Below, in pieces: positions 10,150 through 63,300 of a stretch of DNA of 64,000 bases (within the stretch, counting starts at the first letter, position 1; each line of letters begins with the position of its first letter). Source of the stretch: Bispira polyomma (taxonomy: Eukaryota); the NCBI GenBank assembly GCA_965649765.1, contig OZ287755.1, positions 6,386,001 through 6,450,000 of the forward strand, written 5' to 3'. Under the pieces are notes generated by a model that was not told where the DNA came from, did not search any database, and saw only the letters and a list, made by a program, of their open reading frames with translations. The translations under genes and the position numbers were made by a program.

Positions 10150-10931
10150 TAATACTATATACTATTTTATATATCAACCTTAACCACTGGGGACCGAGTT
10201 GGCCAAGATTTACTCTGTCTATTCACCCACACATTATCACTTTCTTTGTTAGGTGGGACAAGACAATATCTTTTTACTTTAAGTGTTATTTTGTTTATTT
10301 TTGCGATTTTTAAGTAAGATATAATAGATTTATAAAAATACAGAACAAAACAGATAAGGAAAAGCACCATCAAGGGGAAGTCCACACAGCGAAAGGCAGT
10401 AGAAGGAGAAGTAAACGACAGTTTGGTCACAGGCTTTAAGGTTCAATTTGCATCTCCCCTGCCCTGCTTACACAGCACGTTATCCAGATCCCCGTAGATA
10501 CCAGAATCAATTATATCACTCCAGCTCACGTAGCAGCCTCTCACATTCCAGGCGGTCACCAGCCCATAAAAGCTACACGTATACCAAGTTCGGATAGTCA
10601 TGTCTGTAATGACAGTGATTTTGGACAGACTGGTTAAATCTAATGACATAATGAATAGCTGCCTAGATAGGATGGAAGCATGTGAGGTCCAGAGTTCTAC
10701 TCTGACAGTTTTTTTGGAATGTGATGTATACCAAAACAACCCGATAGTTAAATATGCTACGACAAGTAACACTCGTCAATCTGACAACGCAAATAACGCA
10801 AACACAACCTATTGCTCTTGCTGAGTACACAAGTGATCTAATGTGCCTTCCCGATGTTCAAGCCCTAGTCAACCAGGCTAACAAAATTTCACATGCCAAA
10901 ATGAGTTATGCCACCATTCATGTGATCAATT
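10150..10931 (+). mobile_element. 5' part (gag relic) of an old decayed DIRS-order element E1, interrupted by element A
   Basis: ILDRLVKSNDIMNSCLDRMEA and LPDVQALVNQ resemble gag of element D ([27 protein letters not shown]). The left boundary is approximate. Confidence 0.5.
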
Positions 10932-11445
10932 GCTAGGTAGCACGAAGGTGCTAGTGGGTTCAGTGCTTCAGGTAACATAATACTAGCATGTAACCCTCAC
11001 CAATTGACCCCAAGATTCATTGGTGTCACCTGCCCTCATTAAACCCCAGCCTGGCGCCAAAATACACATTTGCCTCACTTTAAAAACTAAATCTGAAGTG
11101 GCAAGACGCCATTTTAAGCAAATACACAAAAATAAATGTTGAACTTTTTCGTGGATCTTAGTCATTTTAGTCTTTATTTTAGTATTTTAATCAAATAGAT
11201 GTCTACAGAAGGACTCGACTGTGCTTATGGATCCAGTGGTTGCAGCGCTCCTGTGATATAATAACTCTGTTTTGAGTCTTGTGATTATTGGCTTCAACTT
11301 GTTGGGGCAATATTAGAGGGACGTTATCAGGCTTTGTATACAGTTTTCAGACCATCCTTCGGTATTTTATTTCAAATTCTGAAAAAATAAACCTCTAACT
11401 CAATATTCACAGGTATCAAAACAGCCGTATCATATATTTATACAG

Positions 11446-12441
11446 ATGGCACCGAGAAAAACATATTATTGTGAGGCATGTGGTGGACACCATCAAAAGC
11501 CTATAAACGAGAAATGTAAAGTGGTATTAAGAGAAATGGACAGTGTTTCTGTAGTGAACAGTGATACAAACTCAGGGAATATCTCGTCAAATGAGGTAAA
11601 CCTGTTGATTCTAAAACAACTAAATGACTTGAGCTCACGCATGGACAAATATGAACAGAATAGTGTTACGGAGCCCCGTCGGACACACACAAGTGTGATT
11701 CCTGTCAGCGTACAGGCGTCACAGCCAGCGACAGCAGTGGCAGCATCCAGTGCACCCCAGATAAGTGAGACTGTGGTGCCGTCCTTGCAGACCCTGAGGC
11801 AAGCTACAGACCTACAGGTGGCCGTGGATAGCAGACTGCGAGAGCTACAACAAGTTAATGAACAAGGTACGTTCTGGTCACAAAGAGGCGGTCAGGAAAC
11901 AATATGGGTGAAGCGTCAGGTACCCTGGCCCCAAAACTTTATCCTAGGTGGTAGCAATAAGTCCAGAATGTCCTACGATGCGTTGTCAATGGCCCAGTGG
12001 GTGGCTGGGTTTAGTTCCATAATTAGAGAAGAAACAAACATTGAAACAAAAAACCATATGCTTGAGTATATGTCTGACCTTATGGAAGACTCTCACGATT
12101 TCACTTGGGTAGCGGCCAAAGGTAGCCATGCGGTGTTAACATGTAAGATGGAAGAGGGGAAATTATCTTGGCAAGACACCTCAAAAATTGATAGGGTGAG
12201 AAGGGCTCATGCCCAAAAGGTTTTGGGGGGTCAAACTTCGGGCTCTGGGGTAACCAAGAGAAATAGTGAGAAATCCATCCCGTGTAAATTCTTTCAGAAG
12301 GGTTCGTGTCCCCAGAAAGGGGACCACGAGACCAAGGGACAATTGTATGCGCATGTATGTGCAAACTGTCATGCCACAGGCCGTTCTTTCCCACACTCGG
12401 CTAAAGACTGCCGTAAAAACAGCAGTGCAAAAAACGAGTAG
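11446..12441 (+). CDS. gag: Gag-like ORF1 of element A
   Basis: 331 aa. N-terminal CEACGGHH..C and C-terminal CKFFQKGSC..H..HVCANC..H..C Cys/His fingers. Homologous ORFs in C and D. Confidence 0.88.
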   Translation: MAPRKTYYCEACGGHHQKPINEKCKVVLREMDSVSVVNSDTNSGNISSNEVNLLILKQLNDLSSRMDKYEQNSVTEPRRTHTSVIPVSVQASQPATAVAASSAPQISETVVPSLQTLRQATDLQVAVDSRLRELQQVNEQGTFWSQRGGQETIWVKRQVPWPQNFILGGSNKSRMSYDALSMAQWVAGFSSIIREETNIETKNHMLEYMSDLMEDSHDFTWVAAKGSHAVLTCKMEEGKLSWQDTSKIDRVRRAHAQKVLGGQTSGSGVTKRNSEKSIPCKFFQKGSCPQKGDHETKGQLYAHVCANCHATGRSFPHSAKDCRKNSSAKNE

Positions 12442-12463
12442 GGCACTGCAGTATTGCAGTGCC
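12430..12463 (+). promoter_or_regulatory. Predicted -1 programmed ribosomal frameshift signal
   Basis: A_AAA_AAC in gag frame, 5-nt spacer after the heptamer region (GAG TAG), then a perfect 9-bp stem GGCACTGCA-GTAT-TGCAGTGCC. Pol is in the -1 frame and open from the slip site. Confidence 0.8.
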
Positions 12464-15038
12464 AAATAGTAAATGTTCTAAAATCACTGTGAAAAGTGTA
12501 AAAACGAGCAATGAAAATGGACCAAATCACAGAAGTAAAAGTGTACATAATAAGGCTTATACTAGAACCAGAGTGATGCAAAATAGTGTATGTGTACATA
12601 ATGTCAGTGACAATTGGAAAGCAGACTGGGCAAGGTTTCAAGGCAAAACATATGCCCAAATACTTTCAAATGGTTTCAGCAAAATCACAGGTACTTTGGA
12701 AGGGAAAAATAAGCAAAGGGTGTGCAATACTTCCAATTGTCACTTAACATGTTCAAATGTCGAAAAGCCACAGTCCAGTGGTTCTTGTTTAAAGGGTCAT
12801 AAAAGTTGTATTTACAATGTACCTAAGCCACAAGTATATGGGTCTAGGAAAGAAACCAATAATGTTTTTTCAGTGCAACACACCGACACACAAGTACAAG
12901 GTGTAAAAAAATCCCCCAACACAATGGTGAGTCCTATTGTGAAACAAAGTCGCACCTCCCTCCAAGAACAATGGCAAAGTGTGAAATCCAAAATTGGGAG
13001 CAACAATGTGGGGACTTTTCATAACAGATTTCTTCCATTGTCGTTGGTAAATGAGGGGGATGGGGACACACTTGGTGACACTGAACACAATGAAACCTTA
13101 AGTGCGGTTCACACTAATGCGACAGGTTCAAAAAGGAAAACCTTAAGTGTGACTCACACTAGGGCAAACAACCACTGTCGGCAGGGTAGTAACACAAACC
13201 CGGGCTTAAGTAGTGTAATTCAAAACTCAGACAAGTATGACTTACAACTGCATGCCAGACCTAAGACTAAAGAACTCCTGAAGTTAGCCTGTACCAATAA
13301 ATGTTTTCAAAATTGGGATACCCAAACACAAGACAAGTTTGGCTTTATTCCTTTGGGAGACCTCACAATTCCTGTATTTGATGCAAGAAATAAATCAACA
13401 GCTCCTTTGTTTGACATACATGAACAGATCAAAAATTCAAATCTTCCAAACTTTAGGGGGGAACAAATTCAAGTAACATCTCAGCTTAATGCTGACAGAT
13501 GGGACTTCTACCTCCAGGGTTACTGGGATAAGCAGTTGCCTTACCTCATCAGATATGGGTTCCCATTTGACTTCGACAACAATAAACAATTATCACATAA
13601 AGAAGAAAATCATAAGTCAGCAACTGATTTCCCAGATGATATCAGGGCTTATCTAGATGAAGAAGTTAAATTTGGGGCCATGTTGGGTCCATACTCAGCA
13701 CCACCATGTAGAGACTTACACATATCACCGTTTATGACCAGAGAAAAGCCTGGGGCAGTCCACAGAAGGGTAATAATAGACCTCAGTTTCCCACAGGGTA
13801 GTTCGGTCAATTCAGGGGTAGCCAAAGATGAGTATTTGAGTACTCCTTTTGTGCTAACCCTACCTACAATAGATACCATTACTCAAAAAGTGCGTCAATT
13901 GGGACGGGGTTCGCTTCTATATAAGACAGATATTAGTAGGGTCTTTCGTCACGTCAAAATGGACCCTGCGGACTACAACCTTATGGGTCTCAAACATGAA
14001 CAGTACTTCGTTGATACTTGTCTCCCATTCGGATTTCGGCACGGAAGTGCCATATTCCAGCGCCTAAGTGACGCTGTACGCTTTATCATGCAACGTCATG
14101 ATTGTGACGTCACTAACTACATAGACGACATTATAGGCTATGGCGTTCCCTCTAAAATACAGTACTCTTTTGATTTGTTACATCATTTACTCCATGACCT
14201 AGGTTTTGACATAAGTGAAAAGAAAATTGTGCGTCCAAGTACACAGGTAGTCTGCTTAGGGGTGCTTATAAACACACTAGATTTCACAGTATCAGTTCCT
14301 CAGGAAAAACTACAAGAAATCATGGGGTTATGTCAATCCTGGCAAGGCAAGCGTACATGTAAAAAGCGTGACCTACAGTCATTACTAGGCAAATTACTAT
14401 ACATCTCAAAGTGTGTCAAAGTTTCAAGGTTATTTCTCAACAGAATGTTAGAGGTACTAAGGTCAGCTTATAGTGCACATGTAATAAACCTAGAAGTAGA
14501 ATTCTGTCAGGATCTTAACTGGTTCTGTACATTTTTACCCACCTTTAATGGCAAAGCTTTCTTTGACCATCGCCCAATCACTGATTGCATAGAACTAGAT
14601 GCCTGTCTTGAGGGCCTAGGGGGCCGCTGTAATGGCCAGGTATACAAAAAGCAAATTCCCAGAGGCTACAATAGTTACCACATAACTCACCTTGAAATGC
14701 TCAATATACTTGTCGCAGTTAGGCTATGGAAAGACCAATGGAGAGGCAAACGGTTATTAGTACATTGTGATAATGAGGCTGTGGTTACAATACTTAACTC
14801 AGGTAGAACTCAAGACCGTACCTTGGCGGCCATAGCCAGAAATATCCATATGGAAACAGCAATGGCTGACATTAGCTTTAGCACAAGTCATATTTTAGGA
14901 AAAAATAACGTTGTGGCTGACCTATTATCTAGGTGGCATTTGTATTCAGACAGCCAGAGTAGGCTAGCTAAGCTCATAGTTGAACCGGAATGGGTAGAGG
15001 TAAAAGATAATACATTAAACATAGACTGGTCTATTTGA
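12459..15038 (+). CDS. pol: Reverse transcriptase / RNase H (Pol) of element A; no ATG at the ORF start, -1 frame to gag
   Basis: RRVIIDLSFP, KTDISRVFRH, LPFGFRHG and YIDD (RT); LDAC, HLEMLN, HCDNEAVV and NVVADLLSR (RNase H). Confidence 0.95.
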   Translation: MPNSKCSKITVKSVKTSNENGPNHRSKSVHNKAYTRTRVMQNSVCVHNVSDNWKADWARFQGKTYAQILSNGFSKITGTLEGKNKQRVCNTSNCHLTCSNVEKPQSSGSCLKGHKSCIYNVPKPQVYGSRKETNNVFSVQHTDTQVQGVKKSPNTMVSPIVKQSRTSLQEQWQSVKSKIGSNNVGTFHNRFLPLSLVNEGDGDTLGDTEHNETLSAVHTNATGSKRKTLSVTHTRANNHCRQGSNTNPGLSSVIQNSDKYDLQLHARPKTKELLKLACTNKCFQNWDTQTQDKFGFIPLGDLTIPVFDARNKSTAPLFDIHEQIKNSNLPNFRGEQIQVTSQLNADRWDFYLQGYWDKQLPYLIRYGFPFDFDNNKQLSHKEENHKSATDFPDDIRAYLDEEVKFGAMLGPYSAPPCRDLHISPFMTREKPGAVHRRVIIDLSFPQGSSVNSGVAKDEYLSTPFVLTLPTIDTITQKVRQLGRGSLLYKTDISRVFRHVKMDPADYNLMGLKHEQYFVDTCLPFGFRHGSAIFQRLSDAVRFIMQRHDCDVTNYIDDIIGYGVPSKIQYSFDLLHHLLHDLGFDISEKKIVRPSTQVVCLGVLINTLDFTVSVPQEKLQEIMGLCQSWQGKRTCKKRDLQSLLGKLLYISKCVKVSRLFLNRMLEVLRSAYSAHVINLEVEFCQDLNWFCTFLPTFNGKAFFDHRPITDCIELDACLEGLGGRCNGQVYKKQIPRGYNSYHITHLEMLNILVAVRLWKDQWRGKRLLVHCDNEAVVTILNSGRTQDRTLAAIARNIHMETAMADISFSTSHILGKNNVVADLLSRWHLYSDSQSRLAKLIVEPEWVEVKDNTLNIDWSI

Positions 15039-16021
15039 TTGTAGGTCTCCCTCCACAACTAGCATCTGTGGCAGCCAAGGCTGCCTCCAGGGCCCACCAA
15101 GCTTTTAGACCCTCCACACAAAAGGCTTACACACATATGTTTAGAGTTTTCCTTGCTTTCACCTGCTTCACAAAGGTTAGATTACAAAATATTACTCCCT
15201 TATTCATACTGGCATTCTTGGAAGTGCTTGTTACAAGTAATGTCTCAAACTCATCTATAGCCAACTATCTTTCAGCAATAAAAGCAAAAATGGTATTATT
15301 TGGGCTGGACACCTCTTGCTTCGCTGACCACCGTATTAAATATTACCAAAAAGCAATAGTGCTCAATAAACCATTTAGGGCAAAGCTAAAAAACATCATT
15401 GATATTCCACTGCTCACAGACATAATCCTCACATGTGACTCAATGTACATGGGCCAGATATTCAAGGCCCTATATTTGGTAGCATTTTATTCTTTTCTTA
15501 GAATTTCCAACCTTGTTCCACATAGTGTGGCTTCCTATTCCCCCCTTCAACAGCTTGCCAGGGGTGACATCTTGTTTGCACCTCCTGGCATGCACATTAT
15601 CATTAAATGGACTAAAACTCTTCAATCCAAAGACACAATCAGAACTTTTAAGTTACCTCACCTTGGCCTATCTCCCCTGTGTCCCGTAAGGGCTGTAAAA
15701 AACTTGCTTGCCATCACTCCTGGTACCAATAATTCACCATTGTTTCAGTTTAAGTTAAATCTAAAATGGATCCCACTTACAGACTCAAGAGTTAGGACCA
15801 ATCTGCACACCATTCTTACTCGTCTACATTGTCAAACCTCAAACATAACCTTTCACTCCTTCCGGCGTTCAGGTGCCACTTATGCATTCAATCATAATGT
15901 ACCCATTCAGGACATCCAGGCTCATGGCACCTGGACGTCGGACTGTGTGTGGAGGTATATTAATCAGGATCATAACACCACTGACCAGGTAGCGCTGGCC
16001 TTCAAATCAGCCCTTTCGTAG
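15035..16021 (+). CDS. Tyrosine recombinase of element A (TTG-called start; probably entered by splicing at 15045)
   Basis: Catalytic R (FLRISN), K (KWTKT), HxxR (HSFRRSGA), W (GTWTS) and Y (VWRY). Confidence 0.95.
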   Translation: MIVGLPPQLASVAAKAASRAHQAFRPSTQKAYTHMFRVFLAFTCFTKVRLQNITPLFILAFLEVLVTSNVSNSSIANYLSAIKAKMVLFGLDTSCFADHRIKYYQKAIVLNKPFRAKLKNIIDIPLLTDIILTCDSMYMGQIFKALYLVAFYSFLRISNLVPHSVASYSPLQQLARGDILFAPPGMHIIIKWTKTLQSKDTIRTFKLPHLGLSPLCPVRAVKNLLAITPGTNNSPLFQFKLNLKWIPLTDSRVRTNLHTILTRLHCQTSNITFHSFRRSGATYAFNHNVPIQDIQAHGTWTSDCVWRYINQDHNTTDQVALAFKSALS

Positions 16022-16608
16022 TTTTCTACTCACTAGTTGGGGTTTGGGGTTTCCTATAACAAACTTTCACATGTTGCATACTACAAATATTACATGTCTA
16101 TATTTAGGGCCACCTTATATTTATATATTATATTTATTTTACTATTTTACTTATATTGTATACTTAAATATACCTTCCATTTTACTTTAAGTTTACTTAA
16201 ATTAAAAAACTTTTAACTTTCTTACAGTTTACTTCAGTTAAGGTCACCATACGTGACCCCAAAAATTTAACTCAATCTGGGTTAACTTCAAGTTAAGGTC
16301 AACCTAAATGACCAAACCTTGTGGTTACATCAATTTAAGGGCAACTTAATTAACCACAATCTCAACTTAAATTAACTTTATCTTGGTTAAAGGTCACCAT
16401 AAAGTGACACCAAACCTAATTTCAAAATTCATAAAAAATTTATGTTAAGGTCACCTTAAGTGGCCCACACTTAAACTCTTTTAAGGTGGCCCTACCCAGT
16501 ATGTACATATATGTAGAATTATTAACATAGAATTAAAACATTAATATTTCCCAATTGGGTTTCTTTTATTTCTTGTCTTATCTCCAAACACTCACATAGA
16601 GGCACTGT

Positions 16609-18080: not shown

Positions 18081-18099
18081 TTAGTATTTTACAAATGTG

Positions 18100-26573: not shown

Positions 26574-26607
26574 GTACAAACTTTATCTTTAACTCACTTA
26601 GTTTTCC

Positions 26608-29600
26608 GGGAAATACTAGCCAAGGCTAAAACTGATGAAACTTTTCAAAAATGGAATAGTCAAAATCGGGCCAAATTTGGTTATATTCCTCTGGGGCCAT
26701 TAAAGAACCCCATAACTGATCAGGAAAACGAGTATAATTTTTCAACTCTGCAGCTCCACAAAGAATAAAAGACAGCAATAAATTCAATATTATGAACAAG
26801 CAGTTCACTGTCGAATCGGAACTGAACCATGTGCGCTGGAAAGAACTCCTAAAGGGTTATTGGGACACCCAATTACCGTTTTTAATCCAGTATGGTTTTC
26901 CCCTTGATTTTGACAGGACTTGTAAATTAGCACATAAAGAACACAATCACCACTCGGCGTGTGAATTTACAGATGACGTCAAAGCTTACCTAACTGAAGA
27001 GAAAAATCATGGTGCCATATTAGGCCCTTTTAAAGAACCCCCTATGAAGGATTTACATATATCCCCGTTTATGACAAGGGAAAAACCTGGCGCCCCTCAC
27101 AGAAGGGTTATTATAGATTTAAGCTTTCCTCAGGGTCAATCAGTTAACGCAGCTACACGTCCAAATCAATACCTTGGTTCAGACTTTCTGTTAACATTAC
27201 CCACCATTGACGATGTCACCAATGAGATTATAAAACTGGGTAGAAATGCCCTTATCTATAAGCTAGATATAAGTAATGCATTTTGTCACGTTAAGCTAGA
27301 CCCAGCAGAATATGACCTACTAGGCCTCAAACTAAACGAATACTATGTAGATACGTGCCTGCCATTTGGCTACAGGCACGGAAGTGCTATTTTCCAGCGC
27401 CTCAGTGATGCAATGCATTTCATAATGTGCGTCAGAGGCTATGACGTCGTCAACTATATCGACGACGACATTGGGTACAGCAACGCACCTGACGTCCATG
27501 ACGCCTATAAAACTTTACAAGAACTGGTCAAAGATCTAGATTTTGCGATTAGTGCAAAAAAGCTTGTGCCTCTGACCAGCAGGGTAACTTGTCTTGGCGT
27601 CCTTATTGACGCGAACAACTTTTCAGTGGAAGTTCCACCTGAAAAATTAAGTCAAATTATTCAAATATGTGACATCTGGGTAGATAAACAGCAATGCTCC
27701 AAAAGAGAATTACAATCACTGCTGGGCTCACTTTTCTACATATACAAGTGCGTAAGGGTTGCCAGAGTTTTTCTAAATAGAATGCTCGACGTCTTGCGAA
27801 AGGCTCATGACACAAAACAAATTAGGCTTGAATTGCCCTTTTTCCAAGATCTAAATTAGTTCACTAAATTTGTAGGCAAATTCAATGGCAAAGCATTCTT
27901 TGACCATAGCCCGGTCAATGACCATATTGAACTAGACGCGTGTTTAATGGGTCTGGGTGGCAGATGTAATAACATAGTGTACACAAAGGAACTTCCTCTC
28001 AATTACCTAGAAATGACCATAGTGCATCTAGAAATGCTGAATATATTGGTAGCCTTGAGATTATGGCAAGGTATATGGCAAGGCAAAAAACTGGTTATTC
28101 ATTGTGATAACGAAGCGGTAGTAACAATTCTGAACTCAGGGAAAACCATAGATCTAACCCTGGCAGCAATTGCACGCAACATCTTTATGGAAGTAGCCAA
28201 AGCTGACATTTATATCAGGCCAGTCCACATCTTAGGTAAACTTAATGTAACAGCAGATCCGTTATCTATGTGGCACAAGGTTATTCACCCAGAAAATAAA
28301 TTACAGCAATTAGTAACAGAACCATGCTGGGTGACTGTCCCAGATCAAATGTTGGCAATTGACTGGAGTATATAATTTTTTTCAGATTTATCCCCCTTGG
28401 TGCGGTGGCTAGCAGGGCAAGCGGCTCACACAGCTCATCAGGCTTTCAGGCCTGCCACTCAGCAGGCCTACCAAAATATGTTCAAGGTTTTCATTGCTTA
28501 CACAGTATTTGTAGGCGTCGATATGATGCAGATTTCAGTTTTATTTGTTCTTTCATTTCTGCAGGTTCTATTAGCCAGTAAAGTATCCCAGCCATCAATT
28601 GCCAACTATTTGGCTGCTATAAAAGGAAAACTTAGCCTATATGCCTTTGACACAAGTCCATTTGCAGATCCACGTATAAAATACTTTCAAAAAGCAATGA
28701 TACTACAAAGACCTTTCAAAGCTAAAATCAATAAAGTAATTGACATCTCGCTGTTAACTCAAATAGTACAAGCCTGTGCTTCAATGTACATGGGCCAGGT
28801 GTTTAAGGCAGCCTATCTACTAGCTTTTTTTTCCTTTTTAAGAATTTTCAACCTGGTTCCACACACAGTGGCTACCTATAATCCGCTAGAGCAGTTGGCC
28901 AGGGCTGATGTGTTATTTGCACCCCCTGGGCTTCAACTTATTATTAAGTGGTCCAAGACTCTCCAAAACAGAAATTCAATCAAAATTCTTAAAGTTCCAC
29001 GTATACACAACTCAGTCTAGTGCCCAGTGGTAGCCATAAGAAATTTCCTTGCTATTTGTCTCAAATAATTCACCTCTGTTTCAGTTTAAGGCATTAAATG
29101 GATGGGTGCCTCTCACGGATTCAAAACTAAGACATAACCTCAAGCAAATTTTGTCAAGACTTAGTCTAAATCACTCCCCAATTGCCTTTCATGACTTCAG
29201 ACGCTCAGGGGCCACCCTGGCTTTCAATAACCATGTCCCTCTCCAAGAAATACAAAGCCATGGCACTTGGACATCTGAGTGTGTCTGGAAATACATAACA
29301 ACAGATCATAACGCCTCAGACCAAGTAGCCCTGGTCTTTCAAAATTTGCTTTCTCTCCCTACTTCCTAAGTTGGGTTTGGTGTTGTTTTTACTTGAAAAT
29401 ATACATAAAATAATATACTCATGTTATCAAGGCTAAGCCCACCTGTATCACAAACTCAAAACTGAAATAAAATAAAAACTCTATTTAAGGTTACCCTAAA
29501 CTTAAAACACCATCTTCAAGTTAAGATAGCCTTAAACTCAAACTTAAATTAAGATGACCTTATACTCGAAAACTTAATCTCACGTTAGGGTAACCTTAAC

Positions 29601-29770
29601 TTAAAACTTTTAACTTAATCTCAGTTTAAGCTGTCACTTATGACAACCTTAAACCTGGTGGGCTTAGTTTTCAGTTCTGTATATAAAGTAGATTAACATA
29701 GAATAAACTAATTATTCCAAGGCTATTCTCTTACTTGATTATCATCACTTCAAGGTCAAATAGGGCACTG
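26608..29770 (+). mobile_element. 5'-truncated, decayed DIRS-order element B (RT/RNase H and YR with in-frame stops and a frameshift)
   Basis: ORFs 26792-27859 (YIDD), 27947-28375 (RNase H), 28397-29020 and 29049-29369 (YR, HDFRRSGA, GTWTS, WKY). Ends in AGGGCACTG like A and C. Confidence 0.9.
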
Positions 29771-30619: not shown

Positions 30620-32210
30620 TTAGATAAAAAAAAGTTCACACAATGTACCAAGGTAGGATGATAGTGTAAAAGAATATCATGATACAGCAAAGTTATGGCA
30701 TGGTATTTGGAATGAATGTGGTTGTCCACATAGTGGTCATGTTGCAAAAATATGTAGCCACACCAGGGCTAAGTACTATCAGGCTGTACGTGTGGATAAA
30801 TGAAACTGTGACAACATTATCACTGAAAAGATGGCTAAGAATTTGCTTAATAAAATACACATAACTTCTGGAGAGATGTAAGACAGGTCAAAAAAGCAAA
30901 AACTTCTATCCCAACTTGTGTTGATTATTCTACTGGTGAAACACAAATTAGCCTTTTTTTCTGTGAAAAAATTAAGCCTTTGTATAATTCAGTGTCTTAT
31001 AGTATTACAGATATGTGTGATATTTATAAAGATATTTATGTAAACATAAAGAAGAAGTGTTTATGCTCCCAGTATAATAATCATTGTATTAATGTAATTG
31101 ATATTCAACAAGGTTTGTCAAAACTAAAAAGTGGACAAAATGATGGTCTTACAATGTGTACTTCTAACCACCTGTTAAATGGATCTGTTAAACTAAGTAT
31201 TTTTACATAGCTCTTTTATTTAGTGCAATGATAAAACCTGGTTTGACCCCAAGTGACATGTTGCTGTTAACAGTTATACCCATTCCAAAAAGCAAACATA
31301 AATCTTTTAACTCCTCTGATAATTAGATGGCCATTGCTTTCAGCAGTATACTTGGTAAGTTACTAGATTCAATAATTCTTAAAAAAAATAAAACAGTATT
31401 CTTAACTTCTGACTAGCAGTTTTGCTTTAAAAGTAAACATTCAACCTTAAATTGTTCATTTGTAAAACAATAAATCATACAATATTACATAAGTAACCAA
31501 ACTAATGTGTATACTATGTTACTGGATTCAAGTAAAGCATTCGATAAGGTACATTATTGGAAACTATTTAAGTTGTTATTAAAAAAAGAATTGTGTCCTG
31601 TCACAGCCAGGTTCCTGGCTGTTATGTATACACATCAAACCCTTCGTGTTAATTGGCGTAATAGTTTATCTAGCACATGTACAATAAGTAATGGTGTAAA
31701 GCAAGGTGGTGTGCTCTCCCCACTATTATTCACTGTATATATAGATCAATTATTAATTCAGTTGAGAGATTCTAGTTGTGGATGTCATATTGGGATTGAA
31801 TACAGCGGCAGCTTTAGCTATGCTGATGACAACATTCTTTTAAGCCCCACATTAACTTTGTTACATATGATGCTTAAGGTATGTGATAGATTTAGTGCTG
31901 ACTACAATGTATCATTCAACCCTGATAAATATCAGTTATTACACTGTAAAAAGTCACAGGCTATAGATGGCTTAATGTTTAATAATATATTTATAAAAAC
32001 TAAAACAAGTGCTGACCATCTTGGTATTGTTCTTAGCACCTATGATACTAATGTAAATATAAAGAATGCTACAGACAAATTTTATGTCTGCATTAATAAT
32101 GTAATGTCTTTCTTTTCACATGTGAATTCCAGTTCGAAGTATAATTTATTTAAAACATGCTGCATGTCTCTTTATGGTGCAGTTCTGTGGGATTATACTA
32201 GTAAAAATGT
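30620..32210 (+). mobile_element. Decayed LINE (non-LTR) RT region, 5' part, interrupted by element C
   Basis: LLDSSKAFDKV, GVKQGGVLSPLLF, YADD and CMSLYGAVLWD in ORF 31507..32262. Confidence 0.88.
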
Positions 32211-35200
32211 GCAAGGTAGCGGGAAGGGGCTACCAAGGTCAATGCTTCAACAAGTATACTAGCATGTATCCCTTGACCAATTGACCTGAATTCTCATTGG
32301 TCTGCACTGCCCTCATTTCCCCCAGCTTACCGCCAAAAACCTCAGATGCTTCACTTGAAAAACTGAAACTGAAGTGGCTAGACGCCATCTTAAAAAATAT
32401 AACAAAAATATTATGTGCTGGACTTTTTTCATGGATTATAGTGATTTTAGTTCTTATTTTACAGTTTTACTCTACTGAATTGGGACGATTGTGCTTATGA
32501 ATCCAGTGTAGCAGTGCTCCTGTGTCTTATTACTCTGTTTTGAGTCTTGCGATCATTGGCTTCACTTGTTGGAGCAAAAGTAGAGGAAAGTTATCAGGCC
32601 ATTCATTCTAACTTATATTGAAACGTTGATTCAAAATTCTGACAAATTACCTCTCACCAATAGTCGCACGTATCCAAACAGCCGTATTCTATATCTGTAG
32701 TGTTATAGCTCCCAGAAAAACTTATGACTGTGAGGCGTGTGGTGGACATCACCAAAAGCCTATAAATGATAAATGTAAAGTCGTGATAAAGGAAACGGAC
32801 AGTATTTCCATGGTGAACAGTACAAACTCAGGTAGTGTCTCCACAAACGAGATCAACCTACAAATATTAAAACAGCTAAGTGATCTGAGCTCCAGGATGG
32901 ACAAATATGAACTTAAAAGCAATACGGAGCCAGCTCGTGAACAGACAACGGTGCAACATATCCCAGTGTCGGTACAAGCAACAACAGTTGCAGGCGCTGG
33001 GTCAACTCCATTGAACGACATAGTGGTTCCTTCACTTCAGACGCTCAGGCAGTCCAGTGATCTTCAGGCTGCAGTTGATGCCCGCCTGAGGTAATTACAA
33101 CAAGTTAACTAATCAGGTACGTTCACAATGTGGCGATTCAGATACTATTTGAGTTAAAAGACAGGTAGCCTGGCCCCAGAACTTTATCCTAGGGGGTAAC
33201 AATAAGTCTCGCTTGTCATATGATTCACTATCAATGGCCCAATGGGTTGCAGGTTTGAGTGCCATGATTAAAGAAGAAGCAAATTTAGAAACCAAAAACC
33301 AAATGCTCGAACACATGTCAAAGCTAATGGAGGATTCTCACGATTTCTCTTGGTCAGCAGCTAAGGGAAGTCACGGTGTATTAACATGTAAAATGGAAGA
33401 GGGAAAAATAACCTGGGCAGATACTGCAAAAATTTATCGTGTTAGAAGGGCACATGCCCAGAAAATTTTAGTAGGTCAAACTGGGCCCGTGGGCTCAACC
33501 AAGAAAAGTAGTGAGAAATCCGTCCCCTGTAAATTTCCAAAAAGGAGACCATGAAAACAAAGGGCAATTATATACACATGTGTGTTCCAATTGCTTCACC
33601 ACAGGTCGCTCTTTCCCACACTCGGCTAAAGACTGTAGGAAAAACAACAGTGCAACAAACGAGTAAAAAGTCGATTTTCAGGTCCTGACAGTAAATATAA
33701 TGTTAAAAGTTTGAAAAACACAGAAAGTGTTAATACAAATGTCATGTATAGGGCCAGTAGATTGGTAAAAAGTAACATGTGTGTAAATGGGGAGAGCGAA
33801 AATTGGAGAGCGGACTGGTTTAGAATAAAAGTCAAAAGCTATGCTCAAGCGGTCTTAAGGGGTGTCAGCTCAGTTAAAGGTAAAACATTTAAAGGGGAAA
33901 ACAAACCACCCAGTATCTCCAACTATCGCTCACCCCACATAAATGTCAAGAATCTGCAGAGCAGTGTAAAAAGACATAAAATGTATGGTCGTCAAGAATT
34001 CAGACCAAAAAGTGTGGAATCAAATGTACATAGGATTATTTCAGCAATTGACGTGTCACCAGTTCATAGAATTGGAGGCTTAACAAGCTCCCACCAGAGA
34101 GAACAAAGTGTCAAAAAAACACCCTCCTCCCCCCCCCCCCCCCCCCCTCCCATTGTAATACAAAGTCCTCGAGGTTGTTTACCAAAACCCATTGTTCAGA
34201 AAGTTGCACTTTCCAACTCACACAATTGGGAGGTGTTGGCACTAATTGGGGTAATAACACTAGTCGAGACCACAATAGATTTGCCCGCCACTAACACTCA
34301 CTGAGGGGGGATGGGGAAACACATAAAGAGGAACAAAGCAATCCCTCAAATGACACCCAAGTTAAACACACTAATAGCACAACCAAAATGACAAAGTCAA
34401 GGTATAACAAGTCTACCAAACCTATTCAGCAAGGGGATCAATGTGAAACAAATGACAAATATGACATGCAAAGCCTAAAAGCAAGAAACTTATGAAGTTA
34501 GACAAACAAAACAAGTGTTTCCAAAATTGGGGCAGACGCCTGATAAATTTGGCTTTATTCCTTTGAGAGACTTAACAGTCCCCGTGTTTGATCTCAAAAA
34601 TATTAGTTCTGAGCCAGTATTCAACATGCACAAAAAAATTAAAAACTCTAAAATCCCCAACTTCATGGGGGAACAAATTCAGGTAGAATCCCAGCTTAAA
34701 GCTGATAAATGGGATTTTTACTTACAGGGCTATTGGGACACCCAATTGAAATATCTCATAAGATATGGCTTCTGGACATCGACAAAAACAATCCCTTAGT
34801 CCACCAGGAAGAAAACCATAAATCAGCTAGGGATTTTCCTAATGACATTAACGCCTACTTAGAAGAAGAATCAAGATTCGGGGCCATGTTGGGTCCCTAC
34901 TCAGCTCCCCCTTGTGCTAACCTACATGTATCACCATTCAGGACCCGTGAAAAGCCAGGCGTACCCCATAGAAGGGTCATAATAGATTTGAGTTTCCCTC
35001 AAGGTTACTCAGATAACGCGGCCGTGGCCAGAGACAAATATTTAGATACACCATTTGTGTTAACACTCCCAACAGTGGACACTATTACTCAAAAAATACG
35101 TCAGCTTGGCCAGGGGTCCTTATTCTACAAAACAGACACAAGCAGGGCCTTCAGGCACGTAAAAATCGACCCTGCAGACTACAATCTGCTAGGTCTCAAA

Positions 35201-37007
35201 CATGAGCAATACTTTGTCGATACATGCCTACCCTTCGGGTATCGCCACGGTTGTGCGATATTCCACCGTCTCAGTGACGCAGTTTACTTCATAATGAAAC
35301 GTCACGACTGTGACATCATAAATTATATTGACGATATCATAGGTTTTGGCATTCCGTCCAAAATACAACGTTCTTTTGATCTCCTTCATGAGACTCTCCA
35401 TGAGCTAGGTTTCGAAATTAGCAAAAAGAAAATAGTGCGCCCAAGCACTCAGGTAGTCTGTCTAGGTGTCCTCATTGATACGGAAAATTTTACAGTTTCA
35501 GTTCCCCAAGAAAAACTCAGTGACATCTTAAAGATGTGTAAATCCTGGCAAGCAAAAACTGCAAAAAAACGCGAGTTACAATCACTTCTAGGTAAATTGC
35601 TCTGTATATCTAGATGTGTCAAAGTATCAAGGGTTTTTCTCAACAAAATGTTGGAAGTATTACGCGCAGCCCACACTGCACACACAATCAACCTAGGGGT
35701 TGAATTCCACCAAGACTTTAACTGGTTCTGTGAATTTCTCCCTTCGTTTAATGGTAAAGCATTCTTTGATCATAGACCAATCACGGATTGTATAGAACTA
35801 GATGCCTGTTTAGAAGGTCTAAGGAGCCGCTGTAACAATCAAGTGTATAAAAAACAACTCCCCAAGGGCTATGAAAACTACCACATTACTCACCTAGAGA
35901 TGCTAAACATACTAGTGGCAGTCAGGCTCTGGAAGAAGCAGTGGGGCAACAAGCGACTATTAATACACTGTGACAATGAAGCTGTTGTTACCATATTAAA
36001 GGTAGAACAAAAGATCATACACTGGGGGCCATGGCAAGAAACATTTATATGGAAACGGCAATGGCAGATATCAATTTTAGCACAATTCATATTTTAGGAA
36101 AACATAATGCAGCGGCTGACCTCCTCTCCAGATGGCATATGTACACTGATAGCCTTAACAGGCTAAGAGAATACATAGCAGAACCACAATGGATAAATTT
36201 GAATGATGATGCCATGAATATTAATTGGTCAATTTGAATTCTAGGTTTATCTCCTCAACAGTACTTTCGTACGTAATGTTGGTAACCATGATGTTTTTAT
36301 CTGGTAAGGGTCTGTGGCATGTACATAGGCACTTAAAGTTTTACATTGAGTTAAATGCAGCAGAAGCATGAACTGTTGAAATATTGTGACTTGAACTAGG
36401 AGTAGGGTGAGCTACTGCATCAGGGTTACTTCCTATCATTGTTATAGATGGGGTCTCTTTTTCTCACTTATAATACAAAACCATCATATATTTTATACTA
36501 AAATTTTACATGTCTATATTTAGGGCCACCTTATATTTATATTACATTTATTTGATCTCTTTTACGTAAACATTATATACTTAAATATAACTTTTACATG
36601 TACTTGTATTTAACTTAACTTGAAAAGTTTATAACTTTGGCAGAGTTGACTTGCACTAAGGCCACTACAAGTGACCCCAAAAGTTTACGCAATGTACTAA
36701 GCTAAACCTAAGCTCAACGCAAATGACCACAACCTTGACATAACTTAATTCAAGGTCAACTCAAATGACCAATCTTAAAAAGTTAAGTTCACCTTAGGTT
36801 AAGGTCACCATAAACTGACCTCTACTAAAAGTAACACTCACCTCAACTTTAGGTCACCTTAAGTGACTTGTCTTCAATTTAGGGTGGCCCTATTCTCAGT
36901 ATGTACATAGAAGTAGAAATGTAACACAGAATAAAATTTTAACATTTCCCAATTGGGATCTTTTTCTTGTCTTATTAAAAATTCACACTCATCACAGGAG
37001 GCACTGT
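32211..37007 (+). mobile_element. DIRS-order element C (A-like family), both ends intact, decayed ORFs, YR gene replaced by unrelated DNA
   Basis: gag relics 32705-33666 and pol relics to 36237. Removing the element restores the LINE frame DYTSKNV|NSFYTAWKKSIR. Confidence 0.92.
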
Positions 37008-57300: not shown

Positions 57301-60300
57301 GCCAAGTGGGTTATACCCCCATTTAGGTTTAGACACTCCGTACAATGTCTTTGAGTAGTCACAACAGTATCCCGGATAACTTGGTTTTGGTTTTTTGGTT
57401 TTTCGACTTATTAATAAGGTCCTGGATCAGCATGGATCATAACTATATTGCTTTCATCAGTTATCTTCAGCAGGTTTGTCTCTTTCATTTACGATTGAGG
57501 ATTATTTAAGATATTTCAAAGTGTTTGATAGGTAAATCAATCAAAATCTACAACATAATCGAGTTGGGAGTTTGGGATTGCAGTATTATATGAAAATTAA
57601 CCAATGTATATATTTATATATTTCTCTTTATATAAAAATTTTTGCCAAATTTTTCATAATCATATCACAAATCAACATGCTCTAAACTGATATAAAAGAT
57701 TTGCATATTTATCAATACCTTGAACTCTGGGGTTAGTTTATTTAGACTACATACTCAACCATATCAGGTGGTACAAAATAAAAACCATTTGTCACAGTCC
57801 CCGTTAGTAAAGTTGAGATAAAGGTCAAAGTTATCCAAGTAAGGTCAAGTTATGGTTATGTTGAAGTTTGAAAGTAAGAGGTAATAAAAGATTTCACTTT
57901 GAGGTTTCATTTTTACATGTTAGTATTTTATGTACATGAAGTTACAGATAAAATAAATGCTTAAAATTTTTTAAACATGACAAATTTTGAAGCCCCAAGC
58001 CAAACCTAAGTAGAGTGTGAGATGGCAGATGTTAAAGGGACCACTGAAGCTGCCTGAGATGTATTCTGTAGATATGTCCAAACTGCTGAGGACCTCCAAA
58101 GGCCATGGGCCATAATGTTCTGCAGAGAAACGTTCTTATTAAATACAAAAGAGGTCCCCGACCTTCTAAAGGCATGAAACCCATGTGAGCTATATTGAAT
58201 GCCGATATGTTGTAAAACTGTTTGTAAAGCTGAACTTACATGTGAGTCGACAATTGGGTGATATGGTGTAGTTTTTGAAGCAAACAGTGGTGCCTTGTCC
58301 GAAAGTTGTCCAGACAAAAGCAGTTTCTTGAGAGCTATAACTGGGCAGATGTGTGAATTATCTAGCACTGGGATCTGTATGATGTGAGTATCAGTTCTAT
58401 TTTGCAAATTCTTAGCCCATTTTAGAATCATGTGGGCACCCAGGTGGCCAAAAATGACATCCTGCCTAATAAAGTGCTTTGTTGGATCAAAAGCTGATTT
58501 TGAATGGGGAGCTATGTTCGAAAGCCTCAAGAAACCAAAGAAGGCCACTAAGAAAATTGATCTGAATAGTATTGGATCTTCAAGTTTGTCACAGGCCTTA
58601 GATATGAGAATCAACTGTTCTATGGTAAAGATTCCTTTAGGTTTTGGTCTGAATATTGAGTTGTGTGTCAGACTTCTAGTGAAAAGTGCTACTGAGTTGT
58701 ATACAAATGGAGTAAGATTCTAGTTTAACTTGGAAGCTACAAATTTTATTGCTGCTAAATAATTGTTCACTGCCCCAGGTGATAACCGGTTTTGCACCAG
58801 GTATTCCAGGAATGCAATCACTGCACGTACGTTTACAGTTGTAATGCCTGTAATTTCTAGGAAGGCTAAGAAAGTTCTAAATTGAGCATTATAGGCTGTC
58901 GTTGTCTTTGGTCTCAAAGCTAAGTCAATCCTAGCACTGGCTGAAGACATCAGGATTTGGCTGATGTATGTGGAACCTGAAATTATATTGACAAATCCAG
59001 GTTGAAGTATTCAATTGGTATTTGTTTCCACTCAAAATCACTGTCAATCTTGTTTATGAGATCTTGGTCAGAAGCTTTGTCTGAATATAGTCTAGACAGA
59101 GCATCTGCAATAACATTTTTCTTACCAGGTATATGTCTAATTTTTGAAGAAATATCATAAGTAGCTGTTAGTAACCAGATGTTTCTCAAACACAATGCTA
59201 AGAAACTATCTCTGGTTTTGTGTGATTCAACAACCAGAACCACAGCCATGTTGTCACAGTTGATCATAAGACTACCATGTCTCCACTCCTCTGCCCATAT
59301 GCATAGCGCAATCACTATGTTCAGCATCTCGAGATGTACAATTGTTAATTTTCCATCGAATAAGTCATGAAATGGTGTGGCATATACTTCTCGGTTCCAA
59401 ACGCCCCCAAATCCTGTGAAGCAAGCGTCCAGATGCAGCTCGTCTGCATATGGTATACTAATGTAATTAATAAAATTAACACCATTATATTTTTCTAAAC
59501 ATTTTATAAACCATTCCAGGTCATATTCCATTTCATTAGTAACTTTAAAGCGCTTGTTGGCGTGCCCAGCTATAAAAGCAGCGAGTAATCTATTAATGAA
59601 GATGCGTGCAGGTGTCACACATTTGTGAATGTATAAAAGCTTTCCTAGAAGTGATTGAAACTTATTTTTAGATATATATTGTTTGAGCAAAACTTCTACG
59701 CAAACGTTATATACTTCCTTAAGCTTTTCTGGTTGGATACTTATAATGCCCTTAATGATGTCAAAATCAATGCCAAGGCATGTAAGTTTAGTAGTAGGGG
59801 GAGTCAATTTGTCTTGGTTCATTGGAAGACCCAGCTTTTTAAGCAATGTGTGGAGTTTGTTGAAGCCCTCGTTGGCTGTTCCTTCTGGCGCAACGCAAAC
59901 GTAGTCATCAATGTATCCGAATACTTTAAAGCCCTATTTACACATGTGAGCAGTTATTGCGTCTGTGCAACGCTGAAACGCAGCGCTGCGATGAACCCAC
60001 CCGAACGCAATGGCAGGGTCCACATAATATTCGCCCTGCCAAGAGATTCCTAGCTTAATTGCGTCCACAGGGTCAACTCGTAGATTCCTAAACGTCCTGG
60101 CCACGTCAATTTTGAATAAAGTGGCGTTCTCAGTATCACGTATGAATTGTGTTATATCATCAATTGTGGGGAACTTTAATGCGAATGCCACGCCATCAAA
60201 TTGATCCCTATCAACATTATCATTCAGCGAATCGCCATACGGATGAGACAGGTTCAAAATCACTCGACGTTTATCAGTATCTTTGGGTCTTGTAAGAAGT

Positions 60301-63300
60301 GGAGAACAATGGTAGTCTGGAGTTTTAACCTCCTTAACTGGCCCTAACATAGCACCTAAATCACTTTCTTTCTTAAGATATTCACCCACGTCATAGGGAT
60401 ACTGCAAAGCAGAGTAATGATTTTTGACCTTAACATTGCCTAACCTATCAGGTGTTCTTAAGCATAGTGGAAATCCAAATGTGATGTATTGAAGCAGTAA
60501 CTTGTCAGGATAATCCTGTAGCATATATTGCCAAGCTTGTGTGTTTAAACCAGATCTCAATGGTATTCTGGCTTGTTTGTAATTTGGTACTCCTGTCTGC
60601 TTTATTACTTGTGCAATTGCAATCATGTCTTCTACTATTCTAATATGTACTGGTTGCCTATCTGGACCTTGAAATTTGAAGTCAGTGTCTGATAAAGCAA
60701 GGAACCCTACAGTCTTATTTTTGTCATGTATGTCTGTGATATTTCTGTTCACAGGTTCACTAGCCTTAAGCATATATGTCATTTGGGAAAAGAATTCTGA
60801 CGACGCAGGGTGAGTATATTTTTCATCGCAATAACTTACCATGCTCTTAGTAGGTTTTACACTACTATCTTCGGTCTGTACCGAGTTGTCTGTCACATCT
60901 ACATTTCTAACATTACAATCTGTATTTTTACCTTCACAGCATCCAATCAATTTATCAATTAAATCTTCTAGATGCTCAGTATAGTTTTTACCACTAGACT
61001 TTAAACACTCCATATCTTTCTTGTAGTAGTGGAAAGCATTACTAGCTTGTTTCTGTTGTTGCACTGATTTACATGTGATTTCATCAAATTATACATATGC
61101 CAGGTCGTTAACTCTGTTGACCCAGATTTCAAAAGAATTAATAACAGATAACATACCGTTAGGTTCAAATTCAAAGGGAGTGTAGCTTTCTTGTCCTGTC
61201 ACTTCATCAGTCTGGCTATTATAAAAGCCGTTTTAAAATTTTTAGGGCCCCCAATGTAAAGTACTGGCAAGCTTTTTGATGTGGTCAAACAAAATAAGTA
61301 CCAATTGGTTACATTAAGTTTTACCTTTATTGGTCCCCATTCATGACTGCCACTCTGAATGTGGACTGTATGATTTTGATTTTTACAATTTTTTATTTTT
61401 ACACAGGTGGTCGAGCTACACTCCCCTGTGGTCAACTTGACCATGCCTTGTCCCCTGCTATGTGTAAGCAATTGCTGGAGACTTTGGACAGCTCCAACGT
61501 CACCATACGTGCTTCCTGAAATGTTCTCACATAATACATTTGACATGACATTAGTTTTATGAATATAATTTTCTCTTACATTGGCTTCCCTAAATGATAC
61601 CTCAGTTCTCTTACTATGGCTATATTTGTCATTAACCTTATTTGCACTTTCATAGTTCTCATTAACTCTAGTATTTACAGTATCTTTCAATGTTCCATAT
61701 TGCTTAGCTGGTTGTCGAATCAACAATTCCTAACTACTTTTTACATTTTGGTTATCAGATTGCTTGCTGGAATTTGCCTTAAAACATTTAAATTCAGGGT
61801 GGTAAGATTCTTTTCCTAGGACTTTGGAACAGTACCAACATTGATGTTTGTAGTTTCCATGGTCATTTTTGTGACTGCATTTACCGTTGTTAAAGAGCTT
61901 ACATATTGTCCTGTGTTCAGTGGTCTGGGAGGTACCTTGATGCTGATTGTTAACCATGGCCAATTGGGACGCGCTCATCCGGTTCAGCGCCCATTGCGTG
62001 TGATCCTGCCACGTTAAGCGCCCCTCCTCGACTTCATGCATATTAGAGGCCCATGCGGTTCTCACTACCGGCCATGGAAGTGACGAAGAGTCTCGCAATG
62101 CGAAAACAATCTGGGTCATCATATCCCTCATTACTGTATTGTCTGCAACCAGCAGAGCGTTGGATATTTGGCCTGCTGCCCATTGTGGGAGTGACAGATC
62201 GTCATAGGCGGGACGTTTGCGCGCAGAAGTGGAGACGTTGGTTGCTAAGCAACCCTCGTTCGGCCAACGATACCTAGGGTCTACTGTGGCAACATCGGTA
62301 GAATTAAATCTGCCAGACTTAACTCTCTGGGTGGTCTTACCTTCAGATAGTTCTCTCTGAGCTAGAGATTCGTAGCTAGCCAGCTGCCGTGTAACTGCTG
62401 ACTGAACATCAGGCATAGAGCGTAGAGTGTGTAAATTGGGAACAATTCCATCCCTGTTATACTCGTGTGGTGTAGGTCCCAGTTGTGGCTGCGGAAATCC
62501 CCGACCATCTCTGAAACCGACATCTGAAGGGGGAGTGTATCTGGGCAGTGGTAAACTGTTAGCATTATTGCTGGCCCGTCCGAGAACAGAAGCACTGTTC
62601 GTGGTTTGACTAGTACAGGTACCCGAGTTACTGCCCGAGGCCGTTTTCGCTTCTACTTTCTCCAGCCTGGACTCTAATCGTCTTAGAATTGCCAACATCT
62701 CATTGGGAGGATCAGCCCCTGCGTGGCATGTAGCCGGTGGTTGTATGAATTGTGAATCTACCTGGAACGAGTCAGCACTCGACGGTCGAGTTGTAGGTTC
62801 CTCTACTTCATTAAGGTGGCTATGAAGATTGCGAACAATATTGTTAGTTACCTGTAGTTCGTCTGTCCCAGTGGTAGGTTTTGACACCTTTGTTTTACGG
62901 CTCGCTGGTTTCTTTGGCTAAACAGGAGTCTTTTTTGTTCTACCCATTTCAATTCACACACATATCCAATAGCACCTTCATTATAGTATAAAACAGGCTA
63001 AAATGTAACTTTTAAAAACATAAACTAAAAACCAAGTTCATATAACTTTCCATGTAAGTTAAAATATTTTTGGTTGTTGTTTCTTCAATGTCGAATTTCA
63101 ATATGGAGGTGTAGCCCCAGAAAAACCGGGAATAGCTAATTAATTAAGGAATTTGATTGGCCCTTGTAGTTATGATAGAATGCACTGAGGATAGCTATAC
63201 CTAAAATTTTTATTAAGGTCAAGTGATATAATTAACGTGGACTGAGATAGCAGTCCCCTGAAGTAGACGTGCTTGACAAACTCACCTACGATATAATCAG

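What the first reader, a model, noticed from the sequence alone, without database searches (positions are those of the whole stretch)
10932..16608. YR retrotransposon with defined ends but no visible ITR/ICR or split direct repeats
Seen: A and C share ends 5'-GC(T/A)AGGTAGC ... GAGGCACTGT-3', fixed by the LINE empty-site reconstruction, and B ends in AGGGCACTG. The 5' terminal sequence does not recur near the 3' end, directly or inverted, beyond 8-9 nt (CAGTGCTTC at 10962 vs the 3' end). Established: DIRS1-type elements use ITRs plus an ICR, and Ngaro/PAT use split direct repeats, to rebuild their ends. A poly(A) signal (ATTAAA 16532; AATAAA 29702 and 36930) lies about 70 nt inside the right end, so the terminus would seem to be missing from a cleaved mRNA. 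Both copies start with a 6-bp hairpin (TAGCAC-GAAG-GTGCTA; GGTAGC-N8-GCTACC). The predicted circle junction reads GCAC-T-GTGC, a palindrome. Inference: a repeat-less subgroup with a different way of restoring its ends.
Basis: partly seen in the sequence, partly recalled or inferred. Interest (0 to 1): 0.78.

Follow-up and report, generated by a model that had tools for sequence, protein, structure and literature searches.

The report
Ngaro-type retrotransposon copies lacking tail repeats
The element is a tyrosine-recombinase retrotransposon of the Ngaro type whose copies in this window lack the usual 3' repeat module, most likely because they are single-unit derivatives of repeat-bearing elements and not a new repeat-free kind.

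Summary
Copy A (10931-16607, one T ambiguous at either end) encodes gag, RT/RNase H and a tyrosine recombinase. Copy C (32210-37006) shares its ends exactly, and neither copy has split direct repeats or long inverted repeats.

In 16 of 17 related elements fetched from another genome the classical Ngaro layout A1-ORFs-B1-A2-x-B2 is present. The window's 5' end is homologous to the start of repeat A and its 3' end (GGCACTG) to the end of repeat B. The poly(A) signal 50-77 nt inside the end is a family-wide feature of B.

So A and C are single A-ORFs-B units without the A2-x-B2 module. One such unit (L006a) also occurs in a repeat-bearing lineage of the other genome.

It belongs to a conserved, covarying two-helix structure across the B|A junction.

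A truly repeat-free lineage is not excluded. All four copies in the window lack the module, A has intact ORFs, and A and C share a derived 5' end without the G-run that all relatives have. The source genome could not be sampled.

The parts
10931..16607 (+). Copy A: complete single unit (A-module, ORFs, B-module) of an Ngaro-type YR retrotransposon, all three ORFs intact, with no A2-x-B2 module downstream
10931..11125 (+). A-module: 5' region homologous to repeat A of relatives. It starts TGCTAGG and contains GGCAAGACGCCATTTT near its 3' edge. The 3' edge is approximate.
10936..10955 (+). Helix 2: 5' hairpin (TAGCAC-GAAG-GTGCTA core), conserved with compensatory changes in relatives
10961..10969 (+). 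3' arm of helix 1: CAGTGCTTC, complementary (8 Watson-Crick pairs plus 1 G-U) to the last 9 nt of the element
11446..12441 (+). ORF1, gag-like, 331 aa, Cys/His-rich ends, no Pfam family
12429..12463 (+). gag-pol -1 frameshift signal: slippery A_AAA_AAC (12429-12435), spacer GAGTAG that includes the gag stop codon, and a 9-bp hairpin (12442-12463)
12459..15038 (+). ORF2, RT and RNase H, 859 aa, in the -1 frame relative to gag. There is no room for a methyltransferase after the RNase H domain.
15035..16021 (+). ORF3, tyrosine recombinase, 328 aa, overlapping ORF2 by 4 nt
16022..16607 (+). B-module: 3' region homologous to repeat B of relatives. It contains TTAAGGTCACC-type short repeats and the poly(A) signal ATTAAA at 16532-16537.
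16599..16607 (+). 5' arm of helix 1 and right terminus: GAGGCACTG
32210..37006 (+). Copy C: sister family of A (72% nt identity), same ends, degraded ORFs, most of the YR gene deleted, inserted in a LINE RT ORF, no repeat module
26607..29770 (+). Copy B: third family (about 59% aa identity in RT), 5'-truncated at pol residue about 271, right end GGGCACTG, no repeat module
57795..63414 (-). Copy D: fourth, distant and degraded YR retrotransposon (36% aa identity to A). The ends are tentative: 5' hairpin 63408-63391, 3' GGGGACTG 57802-57795. No repeat module.
31507..32209 (+). LINE RT ORF interrupted by C. It continues in frame from 37007.

Best explanation
The window holds four copies of Ngaro-type tyrosine-recombinase retrotransposons from three or four families.

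Shown. The coding plan is gag, then a -1 frameshift (A_AAA_AAC plus hairpin) into RT/RNase H, then an overlapping tyrosine recombinase. The ground plan of the clade is A1-ORFs-B1-A2-x-B2. The poly(A) signal sits 50-77 nt before the end of B. Joining the end of B to the start of A creates a conserved two-helix structure. Copy C inserted without a target duplication.

Inferred from the published Ngaro/PAT model. A transcript stops short of the end of B2. In full-length elements the internal B1|A2 junction supplies the missing ends. The junction structure is probably the recombinase's site on a circular or folded single-stranded cDNA.

Conclusion. Copies A and C, and the 3' end of B, are single units A-ORFs-B whose termini are the outer edge of A and the outer edge of B. 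They most likely arose from repeat-bearing parents in one of two ways. The first is deletion between B1 and B2, either homologous (like solo-LTR formation) or recombinase-mediated between the internal junction and the right end. The second is integration of a single-unit circle resolved from the two-junction circle. Such a copy can still make all three proteins but cannot rebuild its own ends.
For: - Relatives: 16 of 17 carry A1/A2 and B1/B2 at 98-100% identity.
- Ends: the window's ends align with A-start (TG...) and B-end (...GGCACTG) of those relatives. B-module motifs and the position of the poly(A) signal are shared.
- Precedent: L006a is an A-ORFs-B unit within the repeat-bearing L004/L039 lineage. 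A degraded bystander copy in L041 also shows no B1/B2 repeat.
- Phylogeny: on the RT tree the window copies sit among repeat-bearing families, with repeat-bearing L032 nearest the root (rooted on the distant L006b). The repeats are therefore ancestral.
- No substitute: there is no adaptation to life without repeats. The poly(A) site is still internal, and no internal copy or complement of the 5' terminus exists.
- Junction structure: 86.7% of cells paired against 34-50% when partners are slid, 6 pairs with compensatory changes, 0 of 500 shuffles as good.
- Literature: loss of these repeats in copies and consensus sequences, and solo AB repeats formed by recombination, are reported (PMC9210276, PMC8547959, PMC6681497).
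Against: - All four copies in 64 kb lack the module, against 1 of 17 targeted copies in the other genome. That sample is biased to very young copies.
- Copy A has 4.5 kb of intact ORFs, so it is young, and deletion would have had little time to occur.
- A and C are long separated (pS saturated at 0.76, pN 0.13). Yet they share a 5' end, TGCWAGG, without the G-run present in all eight relative families, whose x module begins with a matching C-run. This suggests that end structure changed in their common ancestor.
- In the best tree A, B and C form one clade, with weak support (49/10), so a single ancestral loss is not rejected.
- No repeat-bearing copy of the A/C lineage itself has been seen.
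Confidence: 0.6

Rival explanations
1. A genuine Ngaro sublineage lost the A2-x-B2 module and still retrotransposes. It would regenerate its ends in another way, for example by transcribing an excised or unintegrated circle across the B|A junction, as pararetroviruses do.
For: None of the four window copies has the module. A is intact. A and C share a derived G-run-less 5' end although synonymous sites between them are saturated. The helix-1 complementarity between the two termini is kept in A, whose virtual junction folds at -29.1 kcal/mol, z = -5.9. Monophyly of the window copies is not rejected. No x-like sequence occurs in the window.
Against: No alternative template for the ends was found. 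The poly(A) signal remains about 70 nt inside the end, as in repeat-bearing relatives. Single-unit copies also arise in repeat-bearing lineages. B, C and D are old and degraded, so loss by decay is unsurprising. Only one young copy supports the idea.
Confidence: 0.22
2. The single-unit copies move as DNA. The recombinase excises the A-ORFs-B unit as a circle and reinserts it, Crypton-like, so no end restoration is needed.
For: The termini are exactly the two halves of the conserved junction structure. C inserted without a target duplication. A short TG is shared at the joints in 6 of 19 copies.
Against: Cut-and-paste does not by itself raise copy number. The strong purifying selection on RT between A and C (pN 0.13 against saturated pS) shows that these lineages depended on reverse transcription. 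No empty donor sites are known.
Confidence: 0.08
3. Assembly artefact: the B1-A2-x-B2 region was collapsed to a single B because B1 equals B2 and A1 equals A2.
For: In young copies the repeats are 98-100% identical, which is the situation in which collapse can happen. This applies to A only.
Against: The window is 64 kb without any N. B, C and D are old, so their repeats would have diverged and would not collapse. Collapse would have to hit several families independently.
Confidence: 0.04

Closest known systems
Ngaro-like YR retrotransposons (Goodwin and Poulter 2004, as described in PMC9210276, PMC3783388 and PMC8547959)
   Same: gag, RT/RNase H and YR in that order on one strand. No methyltransferase. 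Insertion without target duplication. The nearest relatives carry A1-[ORFs]-B1-A2-B2 split direct repeats.
   Different: The window copies lack A2 and B2. In the relatives seen here a 0.75-2 kb unique segment x lies between A2 and B2, so B1, A2 and B2 are not contiguous. Placement against named Ngaro reference sequences was not tested.
Repeat-less Ngaro/VIPER copies and consensus sequences (DIRS-54_XT in Xenopus, PMC9210276; VIPER Repbase consensus, PMC6681497; truncated Ngaro in Neosartorya, PMC3783388)
   Same: Coding regions are present but the 3' or 5' split repeats are missing. In Xenopus some copies of the same family do carry the repeats.
   Different: Here the loss is clean: the unit ends exactly at the B end. 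It is seen in every copy of the window, including one with all ORFs intact.
Solo AB repeats of Cafeteria Ngaro elements and solo LTRs (PMC8547959)
   Same: They are products of recombination between the direct repeats of one element.
   Different: Those keep the repeat and lose the ORFs (A1 x A2 type). The window copies are the reciprocal class, which keeps the ORFs and loses A2-x-B2 (B1 x B2 type).
DIRS-1 internal complementary region and circle junction (Cappello 1985, as described in PMC7192593)
   Same: A sequence formed by joining the two ends is self-complementary and is thought to define the recombination site. Short nucleotides are shared between the junction and the target.
   Different: There are no inverted terminal repeats, and the internal copy of the junction is direct (B1|A2), not complementary. 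The only terminal complementarity is the 9-nt helix 1.

Membership tests
Ngaro-like (order DIRS) | Encodes RT/RNase H plus a tyrosine recombinase and no DDE integrase or endonuclease | tested here: met
   Pfam hits RVT_1, RVT_3, Phage_int_SAM and Phage_integrase
Ngaro-like (order DIRS) | ORF order gag, RT/RNase H, YR on one strand, with YR downstream | tested here: met
   ORFs 11446-12441, 12459-15038 and 15035-16021
Ngaro-like (order DIRS) | No methyltransferase domain after RNase H | tested here: met
   The RNase H match ends at residue 826 of 859 and no other Pfam hit was found. Only Pfam sensitivity was applied.
Ngaro-like (order DIRS) | Split direct repeats A1-[ORFs]-B1-A2-B2 | tested here: not met
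   Absent from A, B, C and D. Present in 16 of 17 nearest relatives, with ends homologous to the window's.
Ngaro-like (order DIRS) | RT/RNase H groups with named Ngaro reference elements | not tested
   No named reference sequences were obtainable with the tools. The tree contains only unnamed relatives.
DIRS1-like | Inverted terminal repeats plus internal complementary region | tested here: not met
   No inverted repeat links the ends beyond the 9-nt helix 1, and there is no internal complement of the 5' terminus
DIRS1-like and PAT-like | Methyltransferase domain in pol | tested here: not met
VIPER-like | Found only in kinetoplastids | tested here: not met
   The host sequence has LINEs, a sulfotransferase exon and a histone stem-loop hit, so it looks metazoan.
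Crypton (YR DNA transposon) | Tyrosine recombinase without reverse transcriptase | tested here: not met
   An RT/RNase H ORF is present and under purifying selection

The most novel reading that the evidence does not exclude
The A/C lineage is a long-lived Ngaro branch that discarded the A2-x-B2 module together with the G-run at its 5' terminus, and still multiplies. In that case the ends must be restored from a template other than an internal junction, most simply by transcription across the B|A junction of a circular DNA form. That would be a pararetrovirus-like cycle in a YR retrotransposon.
Probability: 0.2. Interest if true: 0.72.

Novelty: new variant of a known kind. Interest (0 to 1): 0.42.

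Why it matters
If these are deleted derivatives, the finding is ordinary annotation: new Ngaro-type families, with the reciprocal of the 'solo AB' class.

Two by-products may be useful. The first is a covarying two-helix structure that exists only when the end of B is joined to the start of A. It is a concrete candidate for the recombinase site or the cDNA circularisation signal, in a group whose replication has hardly been studied experimentally. The second is the suggestion that two-junction circles can be resolved into single units, which would explain both solo repeat units and single coding units.

If the lineage really is repeat-free and active, it would show that split repeats are dispensable for YR retrotransposition.

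Tried and rejected
- Searching for the source genome. The YR and RT word searches gave at most 62% and 59% identity, all from ENA assemblies. Every locus fetched from those hits came from one ENA assembly, ERZ22147071. Same-family copies could therefore not be examined.
- The metagenome scan returned only short, distant contigs with 26-45% identity.
- Rfam found nothing in the conserved x module or in the elements.
- No x-like sequence was found in the window by BLASTN or TBLASTX.
- No open frame crosses A's reconstructed empty site, so A's ends rest on homology only.
The CAC-T-GTG core is conserved by sequence, not shown to be a unit of its own.
- The idea that the frameshift hairpin (GGCACTGC/GCAGTGCC) is an internal copy of the terminus was considered and rejected. 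It keeps this sequence in families whose B end is GGCAATG, so it does not covary with the terminus.
- The Fisher-type contrast of window against the other genome was not relied on, because the external copies were picked for intact or identical YR genes.
The 59-nt virtual junctions were joined only inside a script, for folding.

Full report
WHAT IS THERE

The region 10931-16607 (copy A) carries three intact ORFs on the + strand:
- a 331-aa gag-like protein with no Pfam hit;
- an 859-aa protein with RVT_1 and an RNase H-like domain;
- a 328-aa tyrosine recombinase with SAM-like and catalytic integrase domains.

The gag frame ends ...GCA AAA AAC GAG TAG. The pol frame is open in the -1 frame from before this point. 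The heptamer A_AAA_AAC, a 6-nt spacer and a 9-bp hairpin (-17 kcal/mol, z = -4.9) form a canonical -1 frameshift signal. The same signal occurs in L001, L002, L003, L006a and L039, and with a different hairpin in the distant L006b.

The window holds three further copies:
- C (32210-37006) is 72% identical to A. Its ORFs are degraded and most of its YR gene is deleted.
- B (about 26607-29770) is 5'-truncated.
- D lies on the minus strand at about 57795-63414. It is distant and degraded.

CHECK OF THE OBSERVATION

Homology between A and C begins and ends at the stated positions when the query is extended into the flanks, and the termini align. Removing C restores a LINE RT reading frame with no duplicated target bases.

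No direct or inverted repeat joins the 5' and 3' parts of A, B, C or D, nor their flanks. Seed searches found none. Local alignment scores are at shuffle level. The only adjustment is a 1-nt shift of both ends, which rests on homology to relatives.

RELATIVES

The recombinase has hundreds of relatives at up to 62% identity. Every locus that could be fetched came from one ENA assembly.

Seventeen elements were examined. Sixteen have the classical layout A1-ORFs-B1-A2-x-B2, with A1/A2 and B1/B2 at 98-100% identity. Three of the sixteen depart from it in detail:
- L033 carries one extra A-x-B unit.
- L034 lacks A1.
- L036 has a shortened A.

In all of them A starts TG followed by a G-run, and B ends GGCACTG or GGCAATG. 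The window's A and C start TGCWAGGTAGC and end AGGCACTG. Their 5' 195 nt and 3' 586 nt share motifs with repeats A and B.

It is the normal architecture. In the published model the internal B1|A2 junction is what supplies the bases lost at the transcript's ends (PMC6681497, PMC9210276).

Copies A and C are therefore single units, A-ORFs-B.

A CONSERVED JUNCTION STRUCTURE

Aligning the B1|A2 junctions of seven families with the 5' ends of A and C shows two helices.
- Helix 1 pairs the last 9 nt of B with positions +31 to +39 of A. It covaries: CACTG/CAGTG in some families, CAATG/CATTG in L004 and L039.
Its sequence differs between families but the pairing is kept.

Over 17 pairs, 86.7% of cells pair, against 34-50% when partners are slid. 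Six pairs show changes on both sides, and no shuffle of 500 reaches the observed covariation score. Because the alignment was not fitted to the structure, this is fair evidence.

For copy A, joining its own 3' end to its own 5' end gives the same fold at -29.1 kcal/mol, z = -5.9. It only comes together in a circle, in an internal junction, or by end-to-end pairing of a single strand.

I infer, but have not shown, that this is the recombinase's site or a circularisation signal.

HOW THE SINGLE UNITS AROSE

A circle or an integrated element of the full type contains two identical B|A junctions. Three routes give exactly A-ORFs-B with these termini:
- homologous recombination between B1 and B2;
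- site-specific recombination between the internal junction and the right end;
- resolution of the circle before integration.

The other genome supplies a precedent. L006a is such a unit in the lineage of L004 and L039, and it still has the G-run start. A degraded bystander copy in L041 also shows no B1/B2 repeat. The literature reports loss of these repeats in copies and consensus sequences, and solo AB units formed by recombination.

On the RT tree, A and C are sisters (100/99). B joins an unresolved polytomy with repeat-bearing clades, and repeat-bearing L032 branches nearest the root, which was set on the distant L006b. The repeats are therefore ancestral.

- All four copies in 64 kb lack the module.
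- A has no stop or frameshift in 4.5 kb of coding sequence.
- Among targeted copies in the other genome only 1 of 17 lacks the module. That sample favours very young copies.
- A and C are old lineages kept under selection (pN 0.13, pS 0.76 and saturated). Both start TGCWAGG. All eight relative families start TG plus a G-run, and in all seven families that carry an x module it opens with a matching C-run. Loss of the G-run and absence of x may therefore be linked.
- In the best tree A, B and C form one clade, but with support of only 49/10.
- No internal template for the 5' end exists in A or C, so if the lineage is active its mechanism is not visible in the sequence.

VERDICT

The most likely reading (about 0.6) is derivative single units of a repeat-bearing Ngaro-type lineage. 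A truly repeat-free active lineage gets about 0.2. DNA-level movement and assembly collapse take most of the rest, and a little is left unassigned.

The copies fail one defining feature of Ngaro-like elements (split repeats), but they belong by homology to a clade that has it. I file them as a variant of a known kind.

LIMITS

- The source genome could not be sampled.
- No named reference elements were available for a membership tree.

Noticed in passing
window 12429-12463: Canonical -1 ribosomal frameshift signal between gag and pol (A_AAA_AAC, 6-nt spacer containing the gag stop codon, 9-bp hairpin). It is conserved in five related families and replaced by a different hairpin in a distant one. 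The stem GGCACTGC/GCAGTGCC contains the element's 3'-terminal heptamer and its complement. It does not covary with the terminus, and the coincidence is unexplained.
   Followed up: partly
L001 9609-9870; L002 9611-9880; L003 9571-9845; L005 9831-10030: The first 250 nt or so of the x segment between A2 and B2 is about 90% identical among families whose coding regions are about 75% identical. It is still recognisable in L005. It has no Rfam match and no consistent ORF, so it is a conserved noncoding module of unknown role. No counterpart exists in the window.
   Followed up: partly
L001-L005, L032, L039: first bases of A and first bases of x: In all seven repeat-bearing families A begins TG plus a G-run, and x begins, right at the A2|x border, with a C-rich tract (for example CCCACCCCCCACCC or CCCCTAACCC) that can pair with it. 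Window A and C lack both.
   Followed up: partly
right and left joints of 19 copies (window A, B, C; L001-L006, L032-L042): The base pair after ...CTG is TG in 6 of 19 copies and starts with A in 10 of 19. The base before the element is T in most. In L040 the left joint reads TT where TG is expected, while the right joint has an extra TG. This fits a crossover within a 2-nt overlap that tolerates mismatches, and it resembles the trinucleotide idea proposed for DIRS elements (PMC7192593).
   Followed up: partly
window 57795-63414 (-): Fourth YR retrotransposon (gag 62710-61763, pol 60731-58986, YR 58947-58033 by TBLASTN, 26-37% identity to A). Its ORFs are broken and it has no split repeats within 54000-64000.
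   Followed up: partly
L033 9906-13622: One copy in the other genome carries an extra A-x-B unit (B-A-x-B-A-x-B). The tail module can therefore be gained as well as lost by unequal recombination.
   Followed up: no
L004 1-4987: At least two tandem copies of a 2341-bp unit containing repeat A lie upstream of a full element.
   Followed up: no
window 50082-50127 (-): Rfam histone 3' UTR stem-loop match above the gathering score (38.3 bits, E = 1e-7), but no histone ORF upstream of it on that strand.
   Followed up: partly
window 6440-7093 (-): ORF with a Sulfotransfer_2 domain (E = 8e-16), probably an exon of a host carbohydrate sulfotransferase gene.
   Followed up: no
window 17620-18082 and 19838-20427 (+): Weak RNase H-like matches to the pol of A (31-39% identity), probably remnants of other retroelements just downstream of A.
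   Followed up: no
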